IMG/VR virus record: IMGVR_UViG_3300024358_000009
Location: 1-64,000 of that record
Direction: 5' to 3' (one strand)
Length of the DNA: 64,000 nucleotides
Shown here one piece after another: positions 4,200 to 55,150 of this stretch. Position 1 is the stretch's first letter. Every line of letters starts with the position of its first letter. Both the position numbers and the translations under genes were made by a program. Below the pieces are notes generated by a model that saw only the letters and a program-made list of their open reading frames with translations, had not been told where the DNA came from and made no database searches.

Positions 4200-4272
4200 G
4201 GGCTACTAGCTTAAATAGTAAAGCTCCGAACTCATAATTCGGTGAGTGAAAGTGCAAGTCTTTCGTAGCCCA
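4200..4272 (+). tRNA. tRNA with CAU anticodon (elongator Met or Ile2)
   Basis: Acceptor GGGCTAC/GTAGCCC, D stem GCTT/AAGC, anticodon stem CCGAA/TTCGG with loop CTCATAA, T stem GAAAG/CTTTC with loop TGCAAGT, discriminator A, no encoded CCA; G1:C72 pair argues against initiator. Confidence 0.88.
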
Positions 4273-4286
4273 CTAATTTAGAGGCA

Positions 4287-13263: not shown

Positions 13264-13464
13264 ATGGAAAACGGAAATTTAGTTTTTACTAGGAATTTTG
13301 GCGAATCTTTTACTGTTTATACGCCAAATGGAAATGTAGTAATAACACTATTATCAAATAAATTTAGTACTAATCAGGTTAAAGTATCTGTTAGTGCTCC
13401 TAAAAACTTTAAGATAATGAGAAATGAGATAATTAATACCACAAGAGACAAAAGCCATGAATAG
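13264..13464 (+). CDS. csrA: carbon storage regulator CsrA/RsmA family RNA-binding protein
   Basis: LVFTRNFGESFTV...QVKVSVSAPKNFKIMRNEI matches LVLTRK.GESI.I...QVRIGI.APK...I.R.E; GGAG RBS. Confidence 0.8.
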   Translation: MENGNLVFTRNFGESFTVYTPNGNVVITLLSNKFSTNQVKVSVSAPKNFKIMRNEIINTTRDKSHE

Positions 13465-14737
13465 AAGACATTTTTTACAGCATACTACTGAGTTTGCTTC
13501 TCTTGCACTATTATCAAATCTTCATGCTCAGCAAGAAACAATAAAGAAAAAGGGCAAAAGATTAATAGTTCTTTGGATGAGCGGTGGCCCAAGTCATATG
13601 GACTTGTGGGATCTAAAGCAGGGAGAATCTACTGGTGGAGATTTTAAGCCAATCAACACTTCGGCAAACGGAGTGCAGATTAGTGAAGTTCTTCCAACGA
13701 TTGCTTCACAATTCCACAACTTGGTGGCTATTCGATCTTTGGTTACTAATGAAGGTAGCCATGAGCGTGGCACATACTTAATGAATACGGCTAAACAGCC
13801 TAATCCAGTAGTACAGTATCCAGCTATGGGTGCTGTAGTTTCTTCTTTGATTGGTTCTAAAGAGTTAGCTTTACCAAACTTTATAGGGATTGGTGGTACT
13901 GCTCAAAGAGTTGGCCCAGGTTTTCTTGGAGCTATGTACACACCATTTGTTGTGCAGAATCCTGGTGTTCCACCAGAAAACATTAAAGCACCAGCATCGC
14001 TTGGAGATGACGATGAAAGACTACGCAGAAGACAAAGATTGTTCTATGGAATAGAAGATGAATTTGCCCAAAAAGTAATGCCTCATATTAAAAAGGCTAA
14101 AGATAGAGAAAATTTAGGCAATGTGGCTGAATCTCACTCGTCTATTTATGGTAAAGCCTTTGATCTTACCATATCGCCACTTAGGACAGTATTTGAGATT
14201 AAAAACGAAAACACCGCCACTATTGAAGCTTATGGCGGTAGAATGAACCAATTTGGCATGGGATGCCTTCTTGCTAGAAAACTTGTCGAGAAGGGAGTTA
14301 GTTGTGTTCAAGTCGATCTCGGCGGATGGGATAATCATAATAATATCTTTTCTACTATTAGGAATGGTAATGGCCCTCGGCTTGATAAAGGTTTTGGAAA
14401 CTTGGTAAAAGAACTTAATGATATTGGTTTATGGAAAGATACAGTAGTTCTTTGGATGGGCGAATTTGGTCGTACTCCTAAGATTAATCAAAATGGTGGG
14501 CGTGACCATTGGGCTAGATGTTGGTCTGTTGTCGTTGGCGGTGGTGCAATTAAGGGCGGTCAAGCGTATGGATCAACAAGTAAAGATGGGTTAGATATTA
14601 AAGATAAGCCATGTACCATTGGCGATATTTACGCAACTGTTTATAAAGCTTTAGACATGGATCTTTCTGCTCAAATTAGAGATAACATCGGAAGACCTAT
14701 GAATATTGCAGAAGGAAAACCTTTAGATATTTTTTAA
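13457..14737 (+). CDS. DUF1501 domain protein with Tat signal
   Basis: MNRRHFL; LWMSGGPSHMDLWDLK; GGWDNH; GEFGRTPKIN...GRDHW. Confidence 0.9.
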   Translation: MNRRHFLQHTTEFASLALLSNLHAQQETIKKKGKRLIVLWMSGGPSHMDLWDLKQGESTGGDFKPINTSANGVQISEVLPTIASQFHNLVAIRSLVTNEGSHERGTYLMNTAKQPNPVVQYPAMGAVVSSLIGSKELALPNFIGIGGTAQRVGPGFLGAMYTPFVVQNPGVPPENIKAPASLGDDDERLRRRQRLFYGIEDEFAQKVMPHIKKAKDRENLGNVAESHSSIYGKAFDLTISPLRTVFEIKNENTATIEAYGGRMNQFGMGCLLARKLVEKGVSCVQVDLGGWDNHNNIFSTIRNGNGPRLDKGFGNLVKELNDIGLWKDTVVLWMGEFGRTPKINQNGGRDHWARCWSVVVGGGAIKGGQAYGSTSKDGLDIKDKPCTIGDIYATVYKALDMDLSAQIRDNIGRPMNIAEGKPLDIF

Positions 14738-18189: not shown

Positions 18190-19430
18190 TGCCATACTTT
18201 TCTATAACAACACCAACAAACAATGGCCAGTATTTACCTAGATTGTCTAGGTCTTTAGCAGAACAAACATTTAAAGATTTTGAATGGATTGTTTTGCCAA
18301 ATGGAAATGCAAAAATAGATATGGAATCTTTGGCTGTTAAGCCAAGAATAATAAAATCTTCTAAGCCAGATTCAAAGTTAATAGGTTTATTTAAAAAAGA
18401 AGCTTCTATGGCTGGAAATTGCCATGTAGTCGTTGAAGTTGATCATGACGATGAGTTAACGCCTGATTGTTTGCAAGAACTTTATAACGCATTTAATAAA
18501 GACCAAGACATTGATTTTGCATACTCTAATTGTGCTGAAATTGATTTTAACGACAGACCATTTGTATATTCTGACTATTTTGGCTGGAGGAACAGACCAT
18601 TTAATTATAAAGGCAGAGAAATATTAGAACTAATATCATTTGAGCCTTCAGCAGCTTCTTTTTCTAAGATTTGGTTTTCTCCAAACCATGTTAGGGCATG
18701 GAAAAAATCATTTTATGAAAAGATAGGCGGTCATAATGACAAGATGGAAGTTTTAGACGACCATGAAATCCTTTGCAGAACATATATTCAAGGAAAAGTG
18801 CATTTTATAGACAAGTGTTTATATATTTATTACAGACATAAAGATAATACATGCTACGGAGAAAAGAATGCATTTATTCAGGAAGAAACGCTAAACATTC
18901 ATGATAAGTATATTTATCAACTAGCTGAAAAGTGGTGCGATTTAAACGGATTATTAAAAATAGATTTGTGTGGAGGTTTTAGCAAACCAAATGGGTATAA
19001 GTCTATCGATCTTTTAAATGGTGATATTATTCATGACCTTAATTCTCCGTGGCCTTTTAAAAATGAAGAAGTTGGTCTTATAAGAGCACATGATGCACTA
19101 GAACATCTTAAAGACCCAATTCATGTTATGAAAGAGGCTTATAGATGTTTAAAGCCACTGGGATGGTTTTTAACGCAAACTCCATCAACTGACGGAAGAG
19201 GTGCTTTTCAAGATCCAACACATATTAGTTTTTGGAACAGTAATAGCTTTTGGTATTACACTAAAGCAGAAACAGCTAAATACATTGGAACTCCAGTAAG
19301 ATTTCAATTAAATAGAATTAAAAACTTCTTTCCAAATGAATATTGCAAAACACATAATATTCTTTATGTAAAAGCCGATCTTGTTAAAGTTTCAAATGAT
19401 ATTAGAATACCAGGAGAAGTTTCTATTTAG
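18189..19430 (+). CDS. GT2 glycosyltransferase fused to class I methyltransferase domain
   Basis: FSITTPT, VEVDHDD; C-terminal IDLCGG...HDLNSPWPF...HDALEHL. Confidence 0.85.
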   Translation: MPYFSITTPTNNGQYLPRLSRSLAEQTFKDFEWIVLPNGNAKIDMESLAVKPRIIKSSKPDSKLIGLFKKEASMAGNCHVVVEVDHDDELTPDCLQELYNAFNKDQDIDFAYSNCAEIDFNDRPFVYSDYFGWRNRPFNYKGREILELISFEPSAASFSKIWFSPNHVRAWKKSFYEKIGGHNDKMEVLDDHEILCRTYIQGKVHFIDKCLYIYYRHKDNTCYGEKNAFIQEETLNIHDKYIYQLAEKWCDLNGLLKIDLCGGFSKPNGYKSIDLLNGDIIHDLNSPWPFKNEEVGLIRAHDALEHLKDPIHVMKEAYRCLKPLGWFLTQTPSTDGRGAFQDPTHISFWNSNSFWYYTKAETAKYIGTPVRFQLNRIKNFFPNEYCKTHNILYVKADLVKVSNDIRIPGEVSI

Positions 19431-19866
19431 CTATTTTTAAAAATTTCTCTTGTTGATCTTTTGGACCAGCAAACTTAATTGAGTTTGATCCAAATTTTCT
19501 TATTAATACCAACATATGTTTTGCTATGTAATTAATTACTGATCTTCCTAGTTCAGAGTCAGAAGCATTTTCCCAAACTTCTTGACCAAGCATATGGGCA
19601 AATCCTAAATCATTTTGTTTAGGTGCTGGATAAAACATTAATCCTAAATTATTTGGTCTTATGCTTTCATCGCCAGGGAGTATTCCAAGAACCCATGAGC
19701 AAGACCATTTTCTACAAATATCTGGCCTTGTATCATAAATCATACATCCTTTGTTTTGATGATGACAACTTGTATATTCTGGTTTATTTAATTCTTGAAC
19801 AATCAAAATTGTGCAACAAACATCGCATTCTCCACAGTGTCTATCTGCCAAAGGCAAGTTAATCAT
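19423..19866 (-). CDS. YkgJ-like CxxCxxCC metal-binding protein
   Basis: RHCGECDVCC, C.H...GC.IYDTRPDICRKWSC. Confidence 0.75.
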   Translation of the reverse strand: MINLPLADRHCGECDVCCTILIVQELNKPEYTSCHHQNKGCMIYDTRPDICRKWSCSWVLGILPGDESIRPNNLGLMFYPAPKQNDLGFAHMLGQEVWENASDSELGRSVINYIAKHMLVLIRKFGSNSIKFAGPKDQQEKFLKIAK

Positions 19867-19867
19867 C

Positions 19868-20383
19868 TTATTCTCCTGACCATATTTTTTCTTCTGGGCC
19901 TAATAATCTAGCTAAAGTAAATAAAAAATCGCTTAATCTATTTATGTATATAACAATGTTTTTAAGATATTGGTGAACTTCCATTAATTTAACTAAATCA
20001 ATTTCAACCCTACGACATACTGCTCTAGCAAGATGAATTTCGCAATGATTAAATGGTATAATAAAATTTTTAAGTGGCTTTAAATGTTTTGTCATCTCAT
20101 CAATTTTTTGCTCAAGTTGTTTAATGTGATCTTCTTTAATTCTTTCTTTTCCGGTAGCTATTTCAGCACCTATATCAAATAAATGTTTCTGTGTTTCAAC
20201 AATAAAATCGTAAATGTTTTGAACTTTAAGTTCTAATATATATCTTTGATTTACAAGACCTATTGAAGCATTAAGCTCATCCACGCTTCCAAGAAGTTGA
20301 ATATGTGGATCGGTTTTTGGAACACGCCCAACTTTTGGCAAAAGAGTTGTTCCATCATCTCCAGTTTTAGTATAAACCTTCAT
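19868..20383 (-). CDS. pduO: ATP:cob(I)alamin adenosyltransferase, PduO/MMAB type
   Basis: KVYTKTGDDGTT, GSVDELNASIG, LFDIGAEIA, HLARAVCRRVE, YINRLSDFLFTLAR. Confidence 0.92.
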   Translation of the reverse strand: MKVYTKTGDDGTTLLPKVGRVPKTDPHIQLLGSVDELNASIGLVNQRYILELKVQNIYDFIVETQKHLFDIGAEIATGKERIKEDHIKQLEQKIDEMTKHLKPLKNFIIPFNHCEIHLARAVCRRVEIDLVKLMEVHQYLKNIVIYINRLSDFLFTLARLLGPEEKIWSGE

Positions 20384-21023
20384 TTTTGCTCCAATCTAAG
20401 ATTTTTATCTTTGATTCCATACCTATTTTTGTAAAAGGAAATCCATGAAAGCCAAATGGTTTTTCATTATATTCTTCTGTTTTATGTTCTATTGAAAATT
20501 CAAAAGCCGTTCTTAAATCTGGAAATTTAAACTCGTTTTTTATTAATTCATCATAAGAGTGATAACATATTTCTAAATCTTCATTAAATATGATTGGTTT
20601 ATTTTGATATTTATTTGATATATGTTCCATTAATTTTTTTGACCTTAGACTAAAACCGCCATTGCCAACTTTATTTACATGATCATGATTTTTCCAAGGA
20701 GCACCAATATAATCATACTGTAAAAATTTTTCTGACCAAGAATCTGGATTAATTACAAATCCATCATATTGAATTAATAAAACATATTCTGTATTTATAT
20801 ATTTCACTAAATCACGCAAAATAAAAGCACTATATTCTTCCTTGCTATTTATTTTTTTTACTTGTATGAATTCTATTCTGTCTGTTTTTAGTTCATTTTT
20901 ATCAGATATAAATATACATCTTTTAAAATTTATACTTTGCATACTATATAACATGGCAGAAATTGCTTTTTTATGATTTAAGCAATCAACAGCACACAAA
21001 GTAATATTATTTAGTGAAATCAT
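20367..21023 (-). CDS. DUF5672-like protein (GT-A-like)
   Basis: LLIQYDGFVINP..W...FLQYDYIGAPW, VGNGGFSLRS, NED. Confidence 0.75.
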   Translation of the reverse strand: MISLNNITLCAVDCLNHKKAISAMLYSMQSINFKRCIFISDKNELKTDRIEFIQVKKINSKEEYSAFILRDLVKYINTEYVLLIQYDGFVINPDSWSEKFLQYDYIGAPWKNHDHVNKVGNGGFSLRSKKLMEHISNKYQNKPIIFNEDLEICYHSYDELIKNEFKFPDLRTAFEFSIEHKTEEYNEKPFGFHGFPFTKIGMESKIKILDWSKNEGLY

Positions 21024-21507
21024 AAAGACATATTAATCTTTTTGTATTAGAGTCAATAGCTATTTTTTCTAATATTGGTATTTCTTCAAACCATTCAAAT
21101 AAAGTTTCCTCACTTATATTATGATGACAATCATTTGGTCTATTCCACTTGTATGGAACTGATACTATGAGTTTATTAACTATTTTTTTAAGTTCATTAA
21201 ATACATTTTTTTGTCTTCCTTCAAAATGTTCAAATGCTTGTAAGCATATAGCTAAATCAAACTTATGATTGAATGTCCAAGGTGTAATTGTACAATCAAA
21301 TACATAATTTATATGTTTGTTATGTTGTTTTTCTATTCTTACGGAATTTAAACACAACGGAAAATATGAACATCCTAATTCTAAAATAGACAGTGGATTT
21401 AAATTTTTTGCAATTTCTATTACTTCTTTATAATAATTCCATCTTTTAACAAAATATTTGTCTTCTTTACATTTTTTATCATAATCTTCTTTTGTAACAA
21501 ATTTCAT
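21007..21507 (-). CDS. class I SAM-dependent methyltransferase-like
   Basis: ILELGCS, FDLAICLQAFEHF, LIVSVPY. Confidence 0.7.
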   Translation of the reverse strand: MKFVTKEDYDKKCKEDKYFVKRWNYYKEVIEIAKNLNPLSILELGCSYFPLCLNSVRIEKQHNKHINYVFDCTITPWTFNHKFDLAICLQAFEHFEGRQKNVFNELKKIVNKLIVSVPYKWNRPNDCHHNISEETLFEWFEEIPILEKIAIDSNTKRLICLYDFTK

Positions 21508-21899
21508 TTTTTAGGACTTTTTGTTTTTATTCCTAATTGCTTATATACATTTCTTGCTTTTGGATTGTCATCTATTGCTAATATAACTTTGTCCTTAATG
21601 CTTTCTGCGTGTTTCTTTTTTGATTCTAATTGTTGTTCTTTATTGTTTCCAATATTATTCATCATTAGTCTATTATATTTAATTCCTGATTTTTTTAAAA
21701 CTTTTGTTGTTTCTGATCTATCTGATTCTGGTCTTCCTGTAACTATATAAATTTTATTTGTTTTTGCTAATTCATTAACATAATCAATCATTTTTTTAAT
21801 TGGATATATACCATTACGAATAATAGTGTTATCTATATCAACAATAACTACTGTTGATTTGCTAAAGAATTTCTCAACTTGTTGGTAAAGGTTCAGCAT
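21504..21899 (-). CDS. HAD-superfamily phosphatase (PseT C-terminal-like)
   Basis: VDIDNT, IVTGR, AIDDN. Confidence 0.8.
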   Translation of the reverse strand: MLNLYQQVEKFFSKSTVVIVDIDNTIIRNGIYPIKKMIDYVNELAKTNKIYIVTGRPESDRSETTKVLKKSGIKYNRLMMNNIGNNKEQQLESKKKHAESIKDKVILAIDDNPKARNVYKQLGIKTKSPKK

Positions 21900-22095
21900 T
21901 GTATCGCCCCATTGTAATATTCTTTGTTGCAACAACATCCTTATTAGTAAATTCCCATATTAATCCATTATTAAGAATAACAGTAAATACTTTCTCTATT
22001 TCAGTGCCATATTCAGTAACTAACCAAATTCTTCCCCTACCTTTTGGAGTTTCTACTTCTAATTCTTGTCTTGGTTCATATATCACAATTGGCAT
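21874..22095 (-). CDS. conserved phage hypothetical protein
   Basis: ETPKGRG...EYGTE...IWEFTN.D.....NITMGR pattern. Confidence 0.65.
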   Translation of the reverse strand: MPIVIYEPRQELEVETPKGRGRIWLVTEYGTEIEKVFTVILNNGLIWEFTNKDVVATKNITMGRYNAEPLPTS

Positions 22096-22756
22096 TTTTA
22101 ATCTCTATCGCAGAATCTCTTCTGCATAAATCTTGATATAATTTTTTATCTTTCGACCATTCTTTGCCTGTCCACCACTCAAATCCATTCAATTCACTTT
22201 TATAAATACAGCATTCTTCGTAACCACCCATCATATAATAATAAATACACCCAGATTTTTTAGCTAAAGTAGTTTCAATTAGCGTACTAACATTTCCTAA
22301 AGAAAGTTGTGGTTTTTTATAATCCCACGCAAATTGAACTCCGACAAAAGATTTTTTAAAAAGCTTATAACAAACAAACCCTATCAATTCTGATTCATAA
22401 AAATATTGAATTGAATTTTCTAACATAAGCTCATTATCAAAAACATGTTCGCTAAGAAAACCTCTTTTTGTTTGATAACACTTTGATATTCTTTCAACAT
22501 CTTCCTTAGATGGTTTTCCTAATTGATATTCTATCTTTTTGCTTATTTTTTTTGTTTTTTTATGGCATTCTAGTTCTGACAAGTTATACCTTATTGATCT
22601 TGCTTGAAACCAATAATCGTTCCAAGGTAACCAACCATTTTCTAATAAATTATCTAAATCGTCATTAATTTCTGGGTATCCAAAAACACCACAGTGAATT
22701 AAATCTTGATTAGATATTTTTCCAAAACCATTTATATGATCAAAAAATATTTTCAT
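22076..22756 (-). CDS. arginyl/leucyl-tRNA-protein transferase-like (ATE1/Bpt family)
   Basis: LLENGW, C-terminal FAWDY....SLG....LIE...AK..G..YYYMMGGY..C.IYK...GFEW. Confidence 0.65.
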   Translation of the reverse strand: MKIFFDHINGFGKISNQDLIHCGVFGYPEINDDLDNLLENGWLPWNDYWFQARSIRYNLSELECHKKTKKISKKIEYQLGKPSKEDVERISKCYQTKRGFLSEHVFDNELMLENSIQYFYESELIGFVCYKLFKKSFVGVQFAWDYKKPQLSLGNVSTLIETTLAKKSGCIYYYMMGGYEECCIYKSELNGFEWWTGKEWSKDKKLYQDLCRRDSAIEIKNANCDI

Positions 22757-22757
22757 G

Positions 22758-22786
22758 TAAATATTTACACTTAATTAACGAATAAG
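22758..22786 (+). promoter_or_regulatory. repeated promoter motif TAAA-N16-ACGAATAAG
   Basis: Fills the divergent gap between 22756(-) and 22807(+). Confidence 0.75.
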
Positions 22787-22806
22787 TATAAAAAACAGGA
22801 GTTTAT

Positions 22807-23280
22807 ATGAATATTTTTGCATTAGATTTAAACACCAAACAAGCTGCTGAATGGCATGTAGATAAACATGTAGTCAAAATGCCATTAGAAAGTGCCCAAA
22901 TGCTTTGTACAGTTCTTAATCAACTTGGAGTTAAAACACCATATAAATCAGCTTATGCAAAACATCCATGCACTATTTGGGCAGGAGAAAGCATGGATAA
23001 TTTTATTTGGTTATGTGAACTTGGATTAGAACTTTGTAAAGAGTATACTTATCGTTATGAAAAAGAACATAAGTGTGAAGCTATTATTAAAGAGTGTTTA
23101 ACATATTCTTGTAAAGTTCCAAATAAAGGACTTACAAAATTTGCTCAAGCTATGCCAGAAGAATTAAAAAAAGACAATCCAATAGATGGTTATAGAGAAT
23201 ATTACATAAGGTGTAAATATCATATAGCATCTTGGAAAAAAAGAAATATTCCTTTTTGGTTTATAAAATATGAAACTTAA
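22807..23280 (+). CDS. pyrimidine dimer DNA glycosylase / DenV family protein
   Basis: MNIFALD...HVDKHVVKMPLESAQML, HPCTIW, YREYY. Confidence 0.85.
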   Translation: MNIFALDLNTKQAAEWHVDKHVVKMPLESAQMLCTVLNQLGVKTPYKSAYAKHPCTIWAGESMDNFIWLCELGLELCKEYTYRYEKEHKCEAIIKECLTYSCKVPNKGLTKFAQAMPEELKKDNPIDGYREYYIRCKYHIASWKKRNIPFWFIKYET

Positions 23281-23866
23281 CATCGTTACTGTTCTATGGA
23301 GAAAAAACTATATATTAGAACAGTATAAAACAATACCTAAAAAACCAGACATTAATTGGATTTTATGTAAAACAAATTTGTGGGGAAAGATACCAAATCA
23401 AATTTTATTTAATACAGAATTAAATACAATTGTTTTAGAAACTAAAATTAAAACTAAAAATAAAACAGAGCATATAACAGATTTTGTTTTAAAAATTAAC
23501 CATGGATTAAAAAATGTAGAACATGGTTTTTTTTATATTTTAGATGATGATAATTCATTTAATAATGAAATTTATAATGTATTTAATGAATATAAAAATT
23601 CTAATTATAAAATGATAATAGGAAATCAAATAAGAAATAAAAGAGGAAAAATTCTTTCGGCTCAATATCCAAAGCATGGATGTATAGATATGGGAAATGT
23701 TATTTGTTCAACAGATATTTTTAATAAAGTAGATTATTTTAATAACATAAACAAAAAAAATCGTTTATATGATTGGCAATTTTGGTTAGAATGTTTTAAT
23801 TCTATATCAAAAGATGATGTTTTGCTTTTACATAAAAATATTTTTAATTATAATGGATTAAGATAA
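23270..23866 (+). CDS. glycosyltransferase family 2-like
   Basis: FYILDDDN, IDMGN, DWQF. Confidence 0.6.
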   Translation: MKLNIVTVLWRKNYILEQYKTIPKKPDINWILCKTNLWGKIPNQILFNTELNTIVLETKIKTKNKTEHITDFVLKINHGLKNVEHGFFYILDDDNSFNNEIYNVFNEYKNSNYKMIIGNQIRNKRGKILSAQYPKHGCIDMGNVICSTDIFNKVDYFNNINKKNRLYDWQFWLECFNSISKDDVLLLHKNIFNYNGLR

Positions 23867-24516
23867 TGTCAGCTATAGGTGCTCACAAAATAACTGAAGA
23901 TTTTGAAAAAAAACTATGTGATTATACTGGTTCTCCATACGCAGTTGCTCTTGATAATATGAGCAATGCTTTATTTTTATCTCTTTATTTTGAAAAAAAT
24001 ATAAAAAAATCAATAAAAGAAGATTATATAATTATTCCATCAAGAACATATCCTTCTGTTCCTTGTGAAATAATTCATGCTGGACTTAAAGTTAAATTTG
24101 AAAATACTAATGAAAAAATGTTAAAAGGTGCTTACCAATTAAAAAATTCTAATGTTTGGGATTCGGCATTAAGATTTACAGCTGATATGTATATACCTAA
24201 TTCTTATATGTGCATATCTTTTACTGGTCCATATAAAATATTAAAATTAAGTAAGGGTGGTGCTATTTTAACAGATGATATAGAAGCTGTTAAATGGTTT
24301 AAAAGGGCTAGGTTTAGCGGAAGAAGAGAATGTTCTTATCATGAAGATAATTTTGATATGCTTGGTTGGAATTTTTATATGATGCCAGAATTAGCAGCAA
24401 GAGGATTATTACTTATGTCTGGCTTTTATAATAGTGATAATACAAAAAAACATATTGAAGATTTAGAATTGCCGTATCCAGATTTAAGCAATTTTAAAAT
24501 ATATAGCGAAAAATAA
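23866..24516 (+). CDS. DegT/DnrJ/EryC1/StrS PLP-dependent aminotransferase-like (short form)
   Basis: FEKKLC.YTG..YAVA..N.SNAL.LSL, WDSA, SFT..YKIL..SKGGAILTDD, GWNFYM. Confidence 0.8.
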   Translation: MSAIGAHKITEDFEKKLCDYTGSPYAVALDNMSNALFLSLYFEKNIKKSIKEDYIIIPSRTYPSVPCEIIHAGLKVKFENTNEKMLKGAYQLKNSNVWDSALRFTADMYIPNSYMCISFTGPYKILKLSKGGAILTDDIEAVKWFKRARFSGRRECSYHEDNFDMLGWNFYMMPELAARGLLLMSGFYNSDNTKKHIEDLELPYPDLSNFKIYSEK

Positions 24517-24517
24517 A

Positions 24518-25216
24518 ATGATACATATTTATGGTTTATGTTATAGGATATTAAAATATCCAGATGAAACTATAAAAAGACTAAGGGAAACTGCATCAGA
24601 AGACTTTCATTTAACATGTATTGAATCACGATCTTGTAACTCTGATAAATTTTTTGAATGGGGAATGGAATGTTTAAAAAATAAAAAAATTCAAAGATTT
24701 ATAACATCGAGCACAAATTCTAGAGGATATGGATTTAATTGGTCTATAAAAAATTTTCCGCCAGATAATTCTGAAGATTTTTTTATTATTACAGATTTAG
24801 ATTTGCTAGTTCCAAAAGATTTTGACTGGATAAAAGAAATAAGAGAAAAAATGAAAGAAAATGTTATATGCGGTTTTACATTAAGCAATGAAAACTATAT
24901 AAGTCCTAATTCTGGATGGCATGAAAAATATGTTAAAAAACATAAACTTTTTGGAATGTGGTTAACATCAGTTAAAACACTGTGTTTTATGGAAATATTA
25001 TCTAAAACAAGTTGTAATATACAAGATGTTATTTTAATAAAAGATATGGAAAAATATGGAAAAAGAGATATAATAGACAAAAAATTATATCATTTTGGAT
25101 GGGATTCATATAAAGATGATCCAGATTATTGGAAAGATAAAAAACCATTAGCTTGGCAACAAAAATCAGATAAAAATGATTTAGACAAAATTCCTGTATT
25201 TAAGGTTTATGAATAA
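24518..25216 (+). CDS. putative glycosyltransferase (GT-A-like)
   Basis: FIITDLDLLV DxD motif; sugar-gene context. Confidence 0.5.
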   Translation: MIHIYGLCYRILKYPDETIKRLRETASEDFHLTCIESRSCNSDKFFEWGMECLKNKKIQRFITSSTNSRGYGFNWSIKNFPPDNSEDFFIITDLDLLVPKDFDWIKEIREKMKENVICGFTLSNENYISPNSGWHEKYVKKHKLFGMWLTSVKTLCFMEILSKTSCNIQDVILIKDMEKYGKRDIIDKKLYHFGWDSYKDDPDYWKDKKPLAWQQKSDKNDLDKIPVFKVYE

Positions 25217-25818
25217 TGATTACTGAAAATTCTTTAAATATAGTAAAAAAAATAACTGAAAAAATTCCAAGTTTTCATCATCATTATCATATTCTATACG
25301 ATATTGCAAATAATATAAAAAAAGATACTATAAATTATGTTGAAATTGGTGCTTATGCTGGAGCTTCGGCAATATTAATGCTTCACAATAAAAATGTTAA
25401 AGTTATATCTATAGACATAGGAAAACCAATAGGAAAACAAAAAGTATTAAACAATATAAACATTTTTTTTAGTGAAGAAAGATTTAAATATATACAAGGA
25501 AATTCACAAAATCAAAAAACTATAGATGAATTATTGAAAATAACAAATGAAATAGATATTTTATTTATAGATGGAGATCATTCATTTGAAGGCGTAATCA
25601 AGGATTTTGAAAACTATTCAAATTTTGTATCAAAAAATGGTTTTATAGTTTTTGATGATTATAGGTGTCCTATATGCGTACAAGTAAAACCAGCAGTTGA
25701 TAAAATAGTTAAAGATTTAGACAAAAATAAATTTGAAGTGATTGGTGCAATGGAAAATATATATGGAGCACATCCTAAAAAAAATAAAGGAAATTGTTTT
25801 ATAGTTAAAAAAATATGA
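25216..25818 (+). CDS. class I SAM methyltransferase (Methyltransf_24-like)
   Basis: VEIGAYAGAS, DILFIDGDHSFEGV..DF, IVFDDY. Confidence 0.85.
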   Translation: MITENSLNIVKKITEKIPSFHHHYHILYDIANNIKKDTINYVEIGAYAGASAILMLHNKNVKVISIDIGKPIGKQKVLNNINIFFSEERFKYIQGNSQNQKTIDELLKITNEIDILFIDGDHSFEGVIKDFENYSNFVSKNGFIVFDDYRCPICVQVKPAVDKIVKDLDKNKFEVIGAMENIYGAHPKKNKGNCFIVKKI

Positions 25819-27086
25819 ATAAAATAAATATACTTATATTTCCATGCGGATCAGAAATAGGATTAGAAATTTTTGAATCTTTAAAATTTTTAAAAAACAT
25901 AAATATTATTGGTGGAAGCAGTATTGATGATCATGGAAAATTTGTTTTTAAAAATTATTATAAAAATTTTCCTTTTATAAATAAAAAAAACTTTATTCCG
26001 TTTGTAAAAAAATTTGTTAAAAATAAAAAAATAGATTTTATTTACCCTTGTATGGATTCGGTTTTATTTATATTAAAAAAATATGAAAAAAAAATTGGCT
26101 GTAAAGTATTGACATCTGATTTTAAAACAACAGAAATTTGTTTGTCAAAAGAAAAAACATATTTAAAATTAAAAAATGTAATAGATGTTCCAAAAATTTA
26201 CAAAAACATAAATGATGTTAAAAAGTATCCTGTATATTTAAAGCCAAAAATAGGATATGGATCAAGAAATCATTTTATAGCATATTCAAAAAAAGAAGCA
26301 AAAATTTTCTTAAAAAAAAGAAAAAATTATTTAATTTTAGAATTTTTAAACGGAAAAGAATATACAATAGACTGTTTTACAGATAAAAATAAAAATTTAA
26401 TTTTTGTAAACGCAAGACAAAGAGCAAGAATTTCAAATGGTATTAGCACAAATATAAAATTAATTAATAAAAAAATATTTTATAGTATAGCGAAAAAAAT
26501 AAACAAAACAATAAATTTAAATGGATCTTGGTTTTTTCAATTAAAAGAAGATTATAATAAAAAATTAAAACTTTTAGAAGTAGCACCGAGAATAGCAGGG
26601 TCTTCTGCAATATGTAGATATTTAGGAATAAATCTTTCAGAATTAACAATAATGAATGAAATTTATGACAATTTAAAAATTATAAAAAATAATTTAAAAA
26701 TAGAAACAGACAGATCTTTACAAACAAAACAAAAAGTAAATATAAAATTTAAATATGTTTACATAGATTTAGATGATACAATAATTTTAAATAATAAAAT
26801 AAATGAAAATATAATTGAATTGATATTTAATTTTATAAACAGAAACAAAAAAATAATTTTAATTTCAAGACATAAAAAAAATATAAATAAAACATTAAAA
26901 AAATTTAAAATAAATCATCTTTTTGATAAAATTATACATATTAAAAACAATGAAAAAAAAAGTAAATATATAAAAAACAAAAATTCTGTTTTTATAGATG
27001 ATTCTTTTTCAGAAAGACTGGATGTAAGTATCAATAAAAAAATAAATGTTTTTTGTGTTAATAGTTGTATGTGTTTAAAAGAATAA
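25815..27086 (+). CDS. ATP-grasp protein with C-terminal HAD-like domain
   Basis: YLKPKIGYGSR, EFLNGKEYTID, LLEVAPRIAG; C-terminal IDLDDT...FIDDSFSER. Confidence 0.85.
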   Translation: MNKINILIFPCGSEIGLEIFESLKFLKNINIIGGSSIDDHGKFVFKNYYKNFPFINKKNFIPFVKKFVKNKKIDFIYPCMDSVLFILKKYEKKIGCKVLTSDFKTTEICLSKEKTYLKLKNVIDVPKIYKNINDVKKYPVYLKPKIGYGSRNHFIAYSKKEAKIFLKKRKNYLILEFLNGKEYTIDCFTDKNKNLIFVNARQRARISNGISTNIKLINKKIFYSIAKKINKTINLNGSWFFQLKEDYNKKLKLLEVAPRIAGSSAICRYLGINLSELTIMNEIYDNLKIIKNNLKIETDRSLQTKQKVNIKFKYVYIDLDDTIILNNKINENIIELIFNFINRNKKIILISRHKKNINKTLKKFKINHLFDKIIHIKNNEKKSKYIKNKNSVFIDDSFSERLDVSINKKINVFCVNSCMCLKE

Positions 27087-27089
27087 CAT

Positions 27090-27638
27090 TTAAAAATTTT
27101 TTTTAATTCCGTAAAAATATAAATCTTTTGAATTGTAATTTGTTTCAAAACAATACTCTTTAAACATCAAATTTATATCAATTTGTTCTAAAAAATCTTT
27201 TTCTTCTAAATTTTTATAATAATCCCAATTTGCCAATGGAGAAGCTGCTTTATCATTTCTTTTTGTTCCATGTTCTGGTCTTCCTATTGTTGCACATGTA
27301 AAAAATAAAAGCCCATTAGGTTTTGTCATTCTGTACATATTAACAAATGTTTCTAACCAAAATGGATTGTGTTCAAAGCATTCACAAGAAGCTGTTGTAT
27401 CAAAAATATTGTCTAAATAATTTAACTTTTGCCCCTCACAAACTACATCAACACATTTTCCTTCTCCAACATCAACTCCAGTATAATCGCATTTTTCAAA
27501 AAAAACTCTTATTGTTCCATTTATATTTAAACTTCCTATTTCTAATACTTTTGAATGGATGAAATAATTAGGAAATTTATTTTTTATTTTTTTAACAAAG
27601 CTCATTTGTTCTGAATGAGACATAATTCTCTTTCGCAA
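27090..27638 (-). CDS. class I SAM methyltransferase
   Basis: VLEIGSLNING, YTGVD, CECFEHNP, TKPNG. Confidence 0.85.
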   Translation of the reverse strand: MRKRIMSHSEQMSFVKKIKNKFPNYFIHSKVLEIGSLNINGTIRVFFEKCDYTGVDVGEGKCVDVVCEGQKLNYLDNIFDTTASCECFEHNPFWLETFVNMYRMTKPNGLLFFTCATIGRPEHGTKRNDKAASPLANWDYYKNLEEKDFLEQIDINLMFKEYCFETNYNSKDLYFYGIKKNF

Positions 27639-27693
27639 AAATATTAGTTCATGGGGTATTTACTTTTTAGTTACTTTAATTAGGTAATGCAAC

Positions 27694-52309: not shown

Positions 52310-54223
52310 ATGTCAAAGTGGATTCCTTTGCATGTACATTCACAATATTCTTTGCTCGATGGATTATCTTCTGCTGAAAAAATAGCAGATAGATTATCTG
52401 AACTAGAATTAAAGGCTTGTGCTTTAACAGATCATGGCACATTATCTGGTTTGATTTCTTTTTATAAGAAATTAAAATCTAAATCTATTAGTCCGATTCT
52501 TGGTTGCGAATTTTATATTTGCGAACAAGACCCAACTATTAAGAATGACGAGAATAAAAAACTCAGTCACTTATGTGTTCTTGCAAAGAAAGATGCTGGA
52601 TGGTCAAGTTTAGTCAAAGCGAGTTCGGTATCTAACTCTGTTGATAACTTTTATAGAAAACCAAGACTTGATCTAAAAACATTGTCATCAATTGCAAATG
52701 GCAATTTTATAGTTTTTTCTGGGCATCCAGGGTCTGATCTTGGAAACTGTCTATTCACAGATTTAAATGAAGCTTATAGGGCAGAGACATACGAAATAGC
52801 GAAGTCTTTAGTTCATAAAGATTGGGAAAAAAGAGCAACTGATCTTGCATATAAATATGCAGATTTATTTGGTAAAGAAAATTTTTTCTTAGAAATACAA
52901 CTTATAGATTCTGAAAATATTCCGGCAACAAAGATTATATCTAAAGCATTAAGGCATATTGCTAAAAAGCATGGTTTTAAAACTGTAGCAACTCCAGATG
53001 CTCATTATGCAAGAAAAGAAGATGCTATAGACCAAAGAGTATTATTAGCCTGTTCTATGAAGAAAACTTTAACGGAAATTAGAAACCATATAAACAACGA
53101 TGAAGACTTTGGTTTTTCTGGATTTTTTAAATCAAACAATTATCATATTCCGTCTGTAGAAGAAATTTCTGCTTTAAATCAACCAGAAGAGTTAGAAGCC
53201 ACTTTAGAAATATTTGAGAAGTGCAAAGATTACAATCTATTGCGTAATCCGATGCTTCCAAAAATTGCTGGAGAAACATCTTCTTCTGCTGAAATTAAGA
53301 GGCTTTGTAGAGAAGGTTGGAAAAAAAGATTCTCTTTCAAAAAAGAAGATTCAAGATTTAATCAATATGGTGATCGTGTTACCAAAGAGCTAGAAGTTAT
53401 AACAGGTGCTGGGTTAGAAGATTATTTTTTAATTGTTTATGATTATTGTAATTGGGCAAAACAACAAGGCTGGTTAGTTGGAAAAGGTCGTGGTTCCGGT
53501 GCTGGATGTATGGTTAGTTATTTATTAGGAATAACAGAAATTAATCCAATTGAAAACGGATTGCTTTTTGAAAGATTTTATAACTCAGGTAGAAATGCAC
53601 CAGGTCGTATATCATTGCCAGATATTGATTGTGATTTTCCAATATCGAAAAGAGAAGAAATTATAACTTATATCAAAAACAAATATGGTTCTGATAAAGT
53701 TTCTCAGATATCTGTATTTACTAGAATGCAGGGTCGTGGTGCTTTAAAAGATGTGTTAAGAATACACGCAGCTTGTTCTTTTGAAGAAAGTAATTTAATT
53801 ACTAAACACATTCCAGATGAAGCTGAAATATCAGAAGAATTACAAGAAATGCGTGATGAAGGACAAGAACCATCAATTATTAAGTGGGCTTTAGAAAATT
53901 GCCAAAAAGAACTTGAACCTTATTGCAAATTAAAAGATGATGGCAAACTTGAAGGCGAATATGCAAAGTTTTTTGCTCAAGCCATAAGAATGGAAGGCAC
54001 AAAAAGATCTCAAAGCAAACATGCTGCTGGAATAGTCATAGCTTCTCAGAATTTACAAGATATATGTCCTATGATTTATGATAAAACATCTCATGAAAGC
54101 ATAGCTGGTCTTGAAATGTCAGACTTAGAATCTATTGGACTTGTTAAGTTTGATATACTTGGAGTAGCTGTTTTGGACAAACTTATGGGAGTTCAAAAGC
54201 TTCTTGCTGGAGAAGATTTATGA
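52310..54223 (+). CDS. dnaE: DNA polymerase III alpha, N-terminal part (PHP + catalytic core)
   Basis: LHVHSQYSLLDG, LTDHG, GRGSGAG, LPDIDCDF, SKHAAGIVI, KFDILG then stop. Confidence 0.92.
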   Translation: MSKWIPLHVHSQYSLLDGLSSAEKIADRLSELELKACALTDHGTLSGLISFYKKLKSKSISPILGCEFYICEQDPTIKNDENKKLSHLCVLAKKDAGWSSLVKASSVSNSVDNFYRKPRLDLKTLSSIANGNFIVFSGHPGSDLGNCLFTDLNEAYRAETYEIAKSLVHKDWEKRATDLAYKYADLFGKENFFLEIQLIDSENIPATKIISKALRHIAKKHGFKTVATPDAHYARKEDAIDQRVLLACSMKKTLTEIRNHINNDEDFGFSGFFKSNNYHIPSVEEISALNQPEELEATLEIFEKCKDYNLLRNPMLPKIAGETSSSAEIKRLCREGWKKRFSFKKEDSRFNQYGDRVTKELEVITGAGLEDYFLIVYDYCNWAKQQGWLVGKGRGSGAGCMVSYLLGITEINPIENGLLFERFYNSGRNAPGRISLPDIDCDFPISKREEIITYIKNKYGSDKVSQISVFTRMQGRGALKDVLRIHAACSFEESNLITKHIPDEAEISEELQEMRDEGQEPSIIKWALENCQKELEPYCKLKDDGKLEGEYAKFFAQAIRMEGTKRSQSKHAAGIVIASQNLQDICPMIYDKTSHESIAGLEMSDLESIGLVKFDILGVAVLDKLMGVQKLLAGEDL

Positions 54224-54468
54224 AAAAGAAAGAAGACTTATTGGAAGAAATCAAAGCACTGGAAGAAATGCTTGAGTCAAAAGATGTAATAATAAAAGAA
54301 TCAATTAATATTATGAAAGCTTTGGTTTTCAAATTTGGCGGTAAAGTTCTGTTAAAACCTGAGTTTATTCAAGCAGCAAAAAGTAAGGATAATTATGTAG
54401 ATATAAAATATGACGAATCTGGGCGTTTGAAACTTGAAGTTAAAGAAGTAGATGAATTAAGAAAGTAG
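54220..54468 (+). CDS. hypothetical protein between dnaE halves
   Basis: ATGA coupling, GGAG RBS. Confidence 0.65.
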   Translation: MKKKEDLLEEIKALEEMLESKDVIIKESINIMKALVFKFGGKVLLKPEFIQAAKSKDNYVDIKYDESGRLKLEVKEVDELRK

Positions 54469-54475
54469 GAACATT

Positions 54476-55141
54476 GTGAATAATTCGACTATATTAGTTT
54501 TTGATTTTGAAACTGGTAGTGTCAATCCAGAAACTTGTGAAGTTATTCAAGTAGCTGCTATGGCACTGCATCCAAGAAGTCTTGCTGAGTTAGGGCAATA
54601 CACAAGTCTAATTAAGCCAAGAGACTTTTCTAAGCTTGAAAAAGAAGCTTTAGAAATTAATAAAAAGAGCATAGAAGAACTTGAAAAAGCACCAGATTTA
54701 TCTATTGTTTGGAAATCTTTTACATCTTTTATTAAAAAATATAACCCAAAACCTGGCAATACATTTTTTGCACCTATTGCTGCCGGAAAAAACATAAGAC
54801 ACTTTGACATGATTATCATTAATCGTTTAGCTAGAGAATTTGGCGATTGTGATAAATATGGAAAACAAAACTTATTTAATAAAAGAAGCGTTTTTGATTT
54901 GGATGATTTTGTTTTTTATTGGTTTGATAATTCAAATGAGTTGCGTGATCACAAGATGGACACTCTTAGAGAGTATTTTGGTATGTCTACTGAGAATGCA
55001 CATGATGCTTTAGTAGATGTTAAGCAAACAGCAACGCTATTGAAAAACTTTATACAGCTTCATAGAAAAGTAGCTGCCAAAGTTAATTTTAAAAACTCAT
55101 TAAGTGATAACATAGAAAGAACTAAGGGTTTCTCTGCTTAA
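54476..55141 (+). CDS. DEDDh 3'-5' exonuclease (DnaQ/epsilon-like)
   Basis: FDFETG (ExoI), NIRHFD (ExoII), HDALVD (ExoIII); GTG start after AGGA. Confidence 0.88.
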   Translation: MNNSTILVFDFETGSVNPETCEVIQVAAMALHPRSLAELGQYTSLIKPRDFSKLEKEALEINKKSIEELEKAPDLSIVWKSFTSFIKKYNPKPGNTFFAPIAAGKNIRHFDMIIINRLAREFGDCDKYGKQNLFNKRSVFDLDDFVFYWFDNSNELRDHKMDTLREYFGMSTENAHDALVDVKQTATLLKNFIQLHRKVAAKVNFKNSLSDNIERTKGFSA

Positions 55142-55150
55142 AGGATATTT

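What the first reader, a model, noticed from the sequence alone, without database searches (positions are those of the whole stretch)
22076..22756. ATE1/Bpt-like aminoacyl-tRNA-protein transferase in a phage
Seen: motifs of both halves of the ATE/Bpt fold. Established: these enzymes add Arg or Leu to acidic N-termini to create N-degrons. Inference: the phage may redirect host ClpS-ClpAP proteolysis toward defence proteins, or aminoacylate another acceptor such as a glycan or lipid. It sits divergently from the DenV-like gene across a 50-bp gap.
Basis: partly seen in the sequence, partly recalled or inferred. Interest (0 to 1): 0.75.

Follow-up and report, generated by a model that had tools for sequence, protein, structure and literature searches.

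The report
Viral ATE/Bpt-like transferase with small partner
A tailed phage from river water carries a highly diverged relative of the enzymes that use charged tRNA to add an amino acid to proteins; it lacks the parts that read acidic protein ends and is nearly always paired with a tiny beta-barrel gene, so it probably marks a different, still unknown target.

Summary
The 226-aa ORF at 22076-22756 (-) is real. It belongs to the ATE1/Bpt superfamily of aminoacyl-tRNA transferases: Pfam ATE_C is above its cut-off, the profile match to Bpt has E 1.4e-10 over both lobes, and the best fold matches are Bpt and ATE1.

It is not an ordinary Bpt. All 123 family members lack the Cys4 zinc finger. The arginine that ATE1 needs to read N-terminal Asp/Glu (klAte1 R80) is Ile/Leu/Val. 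The charged-tRNA side is kept: the basic helix, Tyr94, Trp144, Glu161 and Tyr185-Lys186.

The family is viral. It occurs on at least 543 IMG/VR contigs, on no deposited phage genome, and on only 9 scattered MAG contigs. It is equally distant from proteobacterial Bpt and from a Bacteroidota Bpt-like family.

In 82 of 92 loci a 65-73-aa SH3/Tudor-like beta-barrel gene overlaps the enzyme's stop codon (window 21874-22095). This is the only conserved neighbour. The sugar genes and the DenV-like gene are lineage-specific.

The phage has no ClpS or ClpP. A ClpS-like gene occurs in one clade only, independently of the module.

Most likely this is a two-gene, tRNA-dependent aminoacylation module with a new acceptor. 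The ClpS N-degron reading is possible but weakened.

The parts
22076..22756 (-). ATE/Bpt-like aminoacyl-tRNA transferase homologue, 226 aa (the stop codon is 22076-22078)
   Evidence: ORF. ATE_C 32.5 bits. hhalign to Bpt E 1.4e-10. AF2 model pLDDT 87. Best folds are ATE1 and Bpt. Conservation of key residues.
21874..22095 (-). Small partner gene, 73 aa, a five-stranded SH3/Tudor/KOW-like beta-barrel with no known family
   Evidence: Found directly downstream on the same strand, overlapping the enzyme's stop, in 82 of 92 loci. Alignment A3 has 63% mean column identity. Model pLDDT 77, all-beta. No significant fold or family match. Called independently as a gene on 40 contigs.
22076..22095 (-). 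20-nt out-of-frame overlap between the enzyme's last codons and the start of the small ORF (probable translational coupling)
   Evidence: Read directly from the sequence. Overlaps of 4-20 nt recur in other lineages. No terminator-like site lies between the two genes.
22757..22806 (.). 50-bp AT-rich divergent intergenic gap to the Pyr_excise-like gene (22807-23280, +); a presumed promoter region, inferred only
   Evidence: Coordinates and sequence. Promoter-like matches are no more frequent than chance. The adjacency holds only among close relatives.
19423..21938 (-). Co-oriented, tightly packed downstream genes: HAD phosphatase, MTase-like, DUF5672, PduO-type cobalamin adenosyltransferase and a Cys-rich 147-aa protein. 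This is lineage-specific context, not part of the conserved module.
   Evidence: Pfam. Conserved in the sister strain but not in other lineages.

Best explanation
The gene encodes a virus-specific, deeply diverged member of the ATE1/Bpt superfamily. These enzymes take an amino acid from a charged tRNA and attach it to an amino group of an acceptor. Shown here: both lobes of the fold are present, and the donor side is conserved. That side comprises the basic tRNA-binding helix, Tyr94, Trp144, the amino-acid pocket with Glu161, and the Tyr185-Lys186 pair. The acceptor side is rebuilt: there is no zinc finger, a hydrophobic residue replaces the Arg that reads acidic N-termini, and there is a new invariant Arg53. 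The gene forms a fixed two-gene module with an overlapping small beta-barrel gene. Inferred: during infection the enzyme uses host aminoacyl-tRNA to aminoacylate a protein acceptor other than the classical Asp/Glu N-terminus. The small barrel serves as its specificity or targeting subunit, or less likely as its acceptor or a tRNA-holding cofactor. The conserved pocket Glu (Glu in ATE1, Gln in Bpt) hints at a basic donor amino acid such as Arg or Lys, but this is tentative. The biological target and outcome are unknown.
For: Superfamily membership comes from several sources. ATE_C is above its cut-off, and 43 of 44 members hit it. The PDB profile search finds only ATE1 (E 6e-7). hhalign to Bpt gives 96.9% probability and E 1.4e-10 over 176 columns. 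Foldseek ranks ATE1 first (E 3e-9) and 30 of 30 Swiss-Prot hits are Bpt, TM 0.63-0.71. The atlas agrees. The residue mapping is anchored on klAte1 numbering (PMC9351520). Counts over 123 unique sequences: Y94 122, W144 120, E161 118, Y185 116, K186 123, K/R-rich 66-74, R53 and R56 123 each, and position 43 I/L/V 114 with none basic. An 8-residue deletion removes the CxxCxxC knuckle. The module is seen in 82 of 92 loci and 16 of 23 lineages, with a 20-nt overlap. No other neighbour is conserved. The family is viral: at least 543 IMG/VR contigs against 9 MAG contigs in 185,579 species genomes. RNA-library contigs cover the junction at 100% identity.
Against: There is no biochemical evidence of any kind. 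The alignment around GW[LIV]PW has only moderate hhalign confidence. The new invariant Arg53 could sit in the cleft and still bind a carboxylate, which would keep acidic N-termini as acceptors; I could not measure distances in the model. Distant members of the small-barrel family occur without the enzyme, so the barrel is a general phage domain, not a dedicated subunit. The ~250-aa distant branch of the enzyme family lacks the partner. His178 of klAte1 (His118 of Bpt) is not conserved. DNA carry-over in the RNA libraries cannot be excluded.
Confidence: 0.5

Rival explanations
1. It is a classical Bpt-like N-degron writer. It adds Leu (or Arg) to N-terminal Asp/Glu of host proteins so that ClpS-ClpAP degrades them.
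For: The fold and donor-site residues are those of Bpt/ATE1. The invariant Arg53 and Arg56 could supply positive charge. One clade of module-bearing phages also encodes a ClpS-like protein 10-13 kb away. The genome carries tRNA-Leu(UAA).
Against: The equivalent of R80 is never basic, the second Arg of GFRRSG is also lost, and the zinc finger is deleted. NCBIfam arginyltransferase equivalogs score 23 bits against a cut-off of 252. This phage has no ClpS or ClpP. None of the 5 module-bearing genomes that are at least 90% complete has ClpS. A 99%-complete ClpS-bearing relative lacks the module.
Confidence: 0.2
2. It aminoacylates a non-protein acceptor, such as an amino sugar, sugar nucleotide, glycan or lipid, in the manner of FemX or MprF. 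This would serve the phage's sugar-modification island.
For: In this window and in the L005/L031/L037 lineages the module lies among glycosyltransferases, DegT, sugar O-methyltransferase, ATP-grasp and HAD genes. L-PGS/MprF and FemX are second-tier fold matches. Fourteen of 44 members touch the FemAB-like Pfam model.
Against: The sugar context is not conserved. The 4.4-kb cassette beside the gene is absent from the sister strain, which keeps the module. In another clade the neighbours are exonuclease, PhoH, terminase and portal. Fold scores to MprF/FemX are far weaker (TM about 0.4). There is no membrane segment.
Confidence: 0.12
3. It is a non-catalytic binder of tRNA or aminoacyl-tRNA, for example a decoy or shield against host tRNA-targeting defences, or a sequestering factor.
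For: The tRNA-binding helix and 3'-end contacts are the best-conserved features, while the acceptor site is degraded. The partner has an Sm/KOW/Tudor-like barrel, a fold that often binds RNA.
Against: The catalytic Tyr-Lys pair, the amino-acid pocket Glu and many cleft residues are nearly invariant, which a pure binder would not need. No PADLOC or anti-defence family match was found.
Confidence: 0.08
4. It is an ordinary acyl-CoA-dependent GNAT acetyltransferase that only resembles ATE_C.
For: Weak Pfam Acetyltransf_1 hits (E 0.07) in 3 of 44 members.
Against: All top fold and profile matches are two-lobed tRNA-dependent transferases. The basic alpha-3 helix specific to that group is present (PMC9351520).
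Confidence: 0.04

Closest known systems
Bacterial Bpt (aspartate/glutamate leucyltransferase; Pfam ATE_N + ATE_C)
   Same: Similar size (226 aa against about 240) and the same two-lobed fold (TM 0.63-0.71). Also shared: the ATE_C core motifs (FxxDP/WDY...SLG...YxYxG...YK), the basic helix, the Arg equivalent to Bpt R71, and the Tyr-Lys pair.
   Different: Several features differ. The four zinc cysteines are absent and 8 residues are deleted. GFRRSG becomes GW[LIV]PW. Bpt R58 and P59 are lost. The pocket has Glu where Bpt has Gln. The ATE_C score is 32 bits against 118-155. The family is viral and has an obligate small partner gene.
Eukaryotic ATE1 arginyltransferase (PDB 7WFX, 7TIF, 8TZV)
   Same: The only significant PDB sequence hit and the best PDB fold hit. 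The equivalents of Y173, W260, S273, E277, Y303 and K304 are kept, and in this protein also Y289.
   Different: ATE1 is about 500 aa with a variable domain. Its CX2CXnCC zinc finger is strictly conserved and R80 is essential (PMC9351520, PMC10115844). Both are absent here.
Bacteroidota Bpt-like family (alignment A4; uncharacterised, auto-named GNAT or arginine-tRNA-protein transferase)
   Same: About 245 aa, also lacks the Cys4 motif, and has GW at the GF position. The atlas ranks it as the nearest cellular cluster.
   Different: It is much closer to Bpt (E 4.5e-19) than to the phage family (E 6.3e-9). It keeps an Arg in GWYRM. No small-barrel partner was seen.
FemX, MprF and L-PGS aminoacyl-tRNA transferases
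   Same: Dupli-GNAT-type fold, use of aminoacyl-tRNA, and a basic tRNA helix. They are second-tier Foldseek hits (E 5e-6 to 1e-4).
   Different: TM is only about 0.4. The acceptors are lipids or peptidoglycan precursors. The proteins are larger or membrane-anchored.

Membership tests
ATE1/Bpt aminoacyl-tRNA-protein transferases | ATE_C GNAT core (Pfam PF04377) above the gathering score | tested here: met
   32.5 bits against 25. 43 of 44 members hit it.
ATE1/Bpt aminoacyl-tRNA-protein transferases | ATE_N sequence signature (Pfam PF04376) | tested here: not met
   No hit at E<=1 for this protein. One of 44 members hits at E 0.087.
ATE1/Bpt aminoacyl-tRNA-protein transferases | Two-lobed fold with the N-lobe packed on the GNAT lobe | tested here: met
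   Foldseek aligns residues 2/22-219 to whole Bpt models, TM 0.63-0.71. hhalign covers residues 32-202.
ATE1/Bpt aminoacyl-tRNA-protein transferases | Cys4 zinc (or Fe-S) site, CX2C...CC / CxxCxxC | tested here: not met
   An 8-residue deletion at the knuckle, and no conserved Cys in the N-lobe.
ATE1/Bpt aminoacyl-tRNA-protein transferases | Arg of GFRRSG (klAte1 R80) that reads the acidic N-terminal residue | tested here: not met
   The aligned position 43 is I64/L35/V15/H5/A3/T1 in 123 sequences. Position 44 is never basic.
ATE1/Bpt aminoacyl-tRNA-protein transferases | Catalytic and tRNA 3'-end residues (klAte1 Y303, K304, W260, Y173) and the basic alpha-3 helix | tested here: met
   Y185 116/123, K186 123/123, W144 120/123, Y94 122/123, and K/R at 66-74. 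H178 is not kept.
ATE1/Bpt aminoacyl-tRNA-protein transferases | Donor amino-acid pocket (ATE1 S/S/E/Y for Arg; Bpt A/A/Q/L for Leu) | tested here: inconclusive
   The family has A-or-G / A-or-S / E / V-or-Y. This is a mix of the two patterns, so the donor cannot be assigned.
ATE1/Bpt aminoacyl-tRNA-protein transferases | NCBIfam arginyltransferase equivalog score | tested here: not met
   23.1 bits against 252, and 19.5 against 170.
ATE1/Bpt aminoacyl-tRNA-protein transferases | Aminoacyl-tRNA-dependent transfer activity | not testable with these tools
   Needs biochemistry.
Bacterial Leu/N-degron pathway (Bpt or Aat, ClpS, ClpAP) | ClpS adaptor and Clp protease available to read the product | tested here: inconclusive
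   The phage has neither and the host is unknown. A ClpS-like gene occurs in one clade of module-bearing phages but is distributed independently.
FemABX / MprF (non-protein acceptors) | Best fold match, and conserved glycan, peptidoglycan or lipid gene context | tested here: not met
   Second-tier fold matches only. The sugar context is not conserved.

The most novel reading that the evidence does not exclude
A phage-specific, two-component, tRNA-dependent protein-aminoacylation system. An ATE/Bpt-derived enzyme with a rebuilt acceptor site, guided by a small SH3-like subunit, takes amino acids from host charged tRNA and tags a defined host or phage protein at a site other than an acidic N-terminus. 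The tag could mark the target for destruction or switch it off. This would be a new kind of viral post-translational takeover and a third functional branch of the ATE/Bpt superfamily.
Probability: 0.3. Interest if true: 0.85.

Novelty: new variant of a known kind. Interest (0 to 1): 0.62.

Why it matters
Enzymes that transfer amino acids from tRNA to proteins are known from eukaryotes (ATE1) and bacteria (Bpt, Aat), where they write N-degrons. None has been described or studied in a virus. My literature searches and searches of 50,697 deposited phage genomes found nothing; only automatic labels exist in JGI data. This family is abundant in uncultivated freshwater and marine phages. It keeps the tRNA side of the enzyme but has lost exactly the parts that define the known acceptor specificity, and it is locked to a partner protein. 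If it is active, phages divert charged tRNA to modify proteins, with a new specificity rule that can be tested directly in vitro. It would also give the ATE1/Bpt field a minimal, zinc-free natural variant, useful for separating donor recognition from acceptor recognition.

Tried and rejected
(1) The second copy at 171969-172646 (78% identity) is not a paralogue. It lies in a 57-kb stretch collinear with the start of the record at about 77-79% identity. This is most simply a wrap-around into a co-assembled sister strain.

(2) The DenV-like gene is not a functional partner. The adjacency occurs only in close relatives.

(3) The sugar island is not conserved context.

(4) I looked for fusions between the small barrel and an enzyme. 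The best 150 of 841 clusters are all 48-190 aa, and distant members lack an ATE-like neighbour.

(5) The invariant Glu7 of the partner is not enzyme-specific; similar N-terminal motifs occur in unlinked relatives. The partner's residue 2 is variable, which argues against a defined N-terminal acceptor.

(6) ClpS is not a co-inherited component. It is clade-restricted and independent of the module.

(7) PADLOC, PHROGs and Pfam gave nothing for the partner. PADLOC and PHROGs gave nothing for the enzyme either.

(8) Host assignment was not achieved. Module-bearing contigs are binned into MAGs of at least six phyla, which is not reliable evidence.

(9) The read laying cannot prove expression, because RNA libraries can hold DNA.

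(10) Canonical Bpt genes could not be obtained from the control genomes or from Legionellales. They came from a proteobacterial class sample.

Full report
OBSERVATION. The window's minus strand holds an ATG-started 226-aa ORF at exactly 22076-22756. Pfam ATE_C (PF04377) matches residues 101-175 at 32.5 bits, above the curated cut-off of 25. ATE_N does not match at E<=1. NCBIfam's arginyltransferase equivalog models reach only 19-23 bits against cut-offs of 170-252, and PHROGs has no family for it. The 50-bp divergent gap to a gene at 22807-23280 is as described. That gene hits Pyr_excise at 22.8 bits, just under its cut-off of 23, and phrog_624 strongly.

THE GENOME. The window is the first 64 kb of a 206-kb IMG/VR virus record. 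It encodes:
- ribonucleotide reductase, a DnaE-type polymerase, a DnaB-like helicase, a primase, a UvsX-like recombinase and glycosyltransferases;
- further along, a large terminase, a portal and a collagen-like tail fibre.

It is therefore a divergent tailed phage. Bases 1-58,947 are collinear with 149,318-206,319 at about 77-79% identity. The record is thus most simply a ~149-kb genome that runs on into a co-assembled sister strain. The 'second copy' of the gene (78% identical) is then the sister strain's orthologue. A second IMG/VR record of 221 kb shows the same pair in the opposite order.

WHAT THE PROTEIN IS. A search of 5.8 billion proteins returned 68 homologues of 221-271 aa, nearly all metagenomic. 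The evidence from their alignment (A1) is:
- It finds only ATE1 arginyltransferases in the PDB at a significant level (E 6e-7).
- I built a reference alignment (A2) of ten canonical proteobacterial Bpt genes, which score 132-155 bits on ATE_C. hhalign of A1 against A2 gives 96.9% probability and E 1.4e-10 over 176 columns, matching residues 32-202 to Bpt 39-233.
- An AlphaFold2 model (pLDDT 87) finds ATE1 first in the PDB (E 3e-9 to 1e-7), with L-PGS/MprF and FemX well behind.
- In Swiss-Prot models all 30 best hits are Bpt, aligned over nearly the whole length with TM 0.63-0.71.
- The language-model atlas agrees.

Both lobes of the ATE/Bpt fold are present.

WHERE IT DEPARTS FROM ATE1 AND BPT. 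Functional residues come from the klAte1 structure paper (PMC9351520) and the scATE1-tRNA paper (PMC10115844). Aligning the Bpt profile to the klAte1 chain fixes the numbering: GFRRSG is native residues 78-83, so the essential R80 is its first Arg, and C95/C96 is the NCC pair. I carried this mapping to the phage family and counted residues over 123 unique sequences.

Kept (the donor, or charged-tRNA, side):
- Y94 (= Y173), 122 of 123
- W144 (= W260), 120
- E161 (= E277, which is Gln in Bpt), 118
- Y185 (= the essential Y303), 116
- K186 (= K304), 123
- R56 (= Bpt R71), 123
- the Lys/Arg-rich alpha-3 helix at 66-74

Lost (the acceptor side):
- All four zinc cysteines are gone, and an 8-residue deletion removes the CxxCxxC knuckle.
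- R80 is replaced: position 43 is I64/L35/V15/H5/A3/T1.
- The neighbouring Arg is replaced: position 44 is P88/E22 and never basic.

New: an invariant Arg53.

The donor side is therefore conserved and the acceptor side is rebuilt. One caveat is that hhalign confidence around GW[LIV]PW is moderate. However, no conserved basic residue lies anywhere between positions 41 and 52. Arg53 could still provide positive charge in the cleft.

DISTRIBUTION AND ORIGIN. It is on none of 50,697 deposited phage genomes, tested with three divergent queries. Among 185,579 species genomes it is on only 9 contigs, all in MAGs of scattered phyla and several of phage-like length. BFVD holds only one related 143-aa fragment from an uncultured phage. 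A Bacteroidota Bpt-like family (A4) also lacks the cysteines. That family is far closer to Bpt (E 4.5e-19) than to the phage family (E 6.3e-9). The viral family is thus a third, deep branch. JGI's pipeline already labels some members 'arginyltransferase' automatically. I found no paper on a viral or phage ATE/Bpt.

THE CONSERVED PARTNER. I dereplicated 92 loci into 23 lineages (<75% enzyme identity) and clustered their neighbours. The only widely shared neighbour is a ~65-aa ORF directly downstream.
- An HMM of it finds a homologue on the same strand, overlapping or abutting the enzyme's stop, in 82 of 92 loci and 16 of 23 lineages.
- Three further loci have a weak divergent copy just upstream.
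- The seven loci of the distant ~250-aa branch have none.

In the window this is the 73-aa ORF 21874-22095, whose ATG lies 20 nt inside the enzyme's last codons, with no terminator between. It is more conserved than the enzyme (63% against 40% mean column identity). It has no Pfam, PHROG or PADLOC family. It folds as a five-stranded SH3/Tudor/KOW/Sm-like barrel without a significant structural neighbour.

An exhaustive profile search finds 841 clusters of such small proteins (48-190 aa among the best 150 listed) and no fusion to an enzyme among those. Four sampled distant members sit in runs of small phage genes without an ATE-like gene, and they share the core motifs. The barrel is therefore a general phage domain, one branch of which is locked to this enzyme.

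CONTEXT THAT IS NOT CONSERVED. In this phage the module heads a tightly packed minus-strand string: HAD phosphatase, MTase-like, DUF5672, PduO-type cobalamin adenosyltransferase and a Cys-rich protein. It faces a plus-strand sugar cassette: GT-like, DegT, an unknown gene, CmcI-type O-methyltransferase, ATP-grasp, methyltransferase and then GNAT. The sister strain keeps the module but lacks 23,248-27,687. In another major clade the neighbours are an exonuclease, PhoH, terminase and portal. The packaging genes of that clade have no counterpart in this genome, which suggests the module moves between phage lineages. The DenV-like neighbour is restricted to close relatives.

THE N-DEGRON IDEA. This phage has no ClpS or ClpP. 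A ClpS-like gene turned up on the module-bearing contig of a Chitinophagaceae MAG and in 2 of 18 long viral records, 10-13 kb from the enzyme. It has 84 aa, keeps the NDD motif, has almost no N-terminal extension, and scores 41-53 bits. However, none of the five module-bearing records that are at least 90% complete has it. A 99%-complete relative with an 85%-identical ClpS lacks the module, and a positive control rang in the same search. The two genes are therefore independent accessories. This leaves the N-degron reading possible but adds little to it.

EXPRESSION. The stretch is present in many riverine DNA runs and in metatranscriptome runs. RNA-library contigs match at 100% identity and bridge the junction between the enzyme and the partner, with uneven depth. 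DNA carry-over cannot be excluded.

VERDICT. Shown:
- a real, conserved, virus-specific ATE/Bpt-superfamily gene with an intact donor side and a rebuilt acceptor side;
- a fixed pairing with a small beta-barrel gene.

Inferred:
- it is an active aminoacyl-tRNA transferase whose acceptor is not the classical acidic N-terminus;
- the barrel provides specificity, or is itself the acceptor or a tRNA-holding cofactor;
- the pocket Glu hints at a basic donor amino acid.

The classical Bpt-like N-degron role (0.2), a non-protein acceptor (0.12), a non-catalytic tRNA binder (0.08) and a plain GNAT (0.04) remain as rivals. It is a new variant of a known kind. It is attractive because a simple in vitro assay would decide between these readings.

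Noticed in passing
window 1-58947 and genome 149318-206319 (G000): The 206-kb record is collinear with itself at about 77-79% identity over its first and last ~57-59 kb. A second IMG/VR record (221 kb; L021, L024) holds the same two versions in the opposite order. This is most simply two co-occurring strains joined through a shared ~90-kb region, giving a true genome of about 149 kb despite CheckV's '100% complete'.
   Followed up: partly
window 52310-56776: The DnaE-type DNA polymerase is in two ORFs, of 637 and 541 aa, which match the N- and C-terminal parts of phrog_405. Between them lies a 221-aa ORF (54476-55141) resembling the PolC-type/DnaQ 3'-5' exonuclease (PDB 2P1J, E 2.5e-7). The layout is PolC-like but split into three genes.
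   Followed up: partly
window 23248-27687: A 4.4-kb, very AT-rich (21-26% GC) sugar-modification cassette is present in this strain and replaced by about 370 bp in the sister strain. It holds GT-like, DegT aminotransferase, an unknown gene, CmcI-type O-methyltransferase, ATP-grasp and methyltransferase genes.
   Followed up: partly
L129:1492-1746 (+); also G063 100469-100657 and G001:C153 4446-4634: Phage-encoded ClpS-like proteins of about 84 aa with the NDD core but almost no N-terminal extension. At least 42 viral contigs carry close relatives. A ClpS without its delivery tail could block, and not feed, N-degron degradation. This is untested.
   Followed up: partly
window 21874-22095 and proteins P0122-P0271: The small beta-barrel partner belongs to a large, unnamed family of short phage proteins (841 clusters at E<=1e-3) with the motifs TPKGxG, DYGxE and NITxGR. 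Most members are not linked to the enzyme, and their function is unknown.
   Followed up: partly
window 19868-20383 (-) and 13457-14737 (+): The phage carries a PduO-type cobalamin adenosyltransferase (161 bits) and a full-length DUF1501 protein (311 bits). Both are unusual auxiliary genes and may hint at the host's lifestyle.
   Followed up: no
window 4200-4273; genome 145869-145942 and 152052-152124: tRNA genes: Met(CAU) in the window and two Leu(UAA) elsewhere in the record, one of them in the sister-strain part. Leu-tRNA is the donor for Bpt, but a UAA-anticodon Leu tRNA is also what an AT-rich phage would carry for codon usage.
   Followed up: no
L100:1216-1974 and alignment A4: Bacteroidota carry a ~245-aa Bpt-like family that also lacks the Cys4 zinc site and has GWYRM in place of GFRRSG. 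It appears to be uncharacterised, and databases label it variously as GNAT or arginine-tRNA-protein transferase.
   Followed up: partly
genome 117047-121475 (outside the window): Dense internal direct repeats (75-87% identity) lie within a 2164-aa ORF (L126:9556-16047, minus strand), which was not annotated. A smaller repeat set at 108.8-110.2 kb lies in the collagen-like tail-fibre gene (L126:3525-6467).
   Followed up: no
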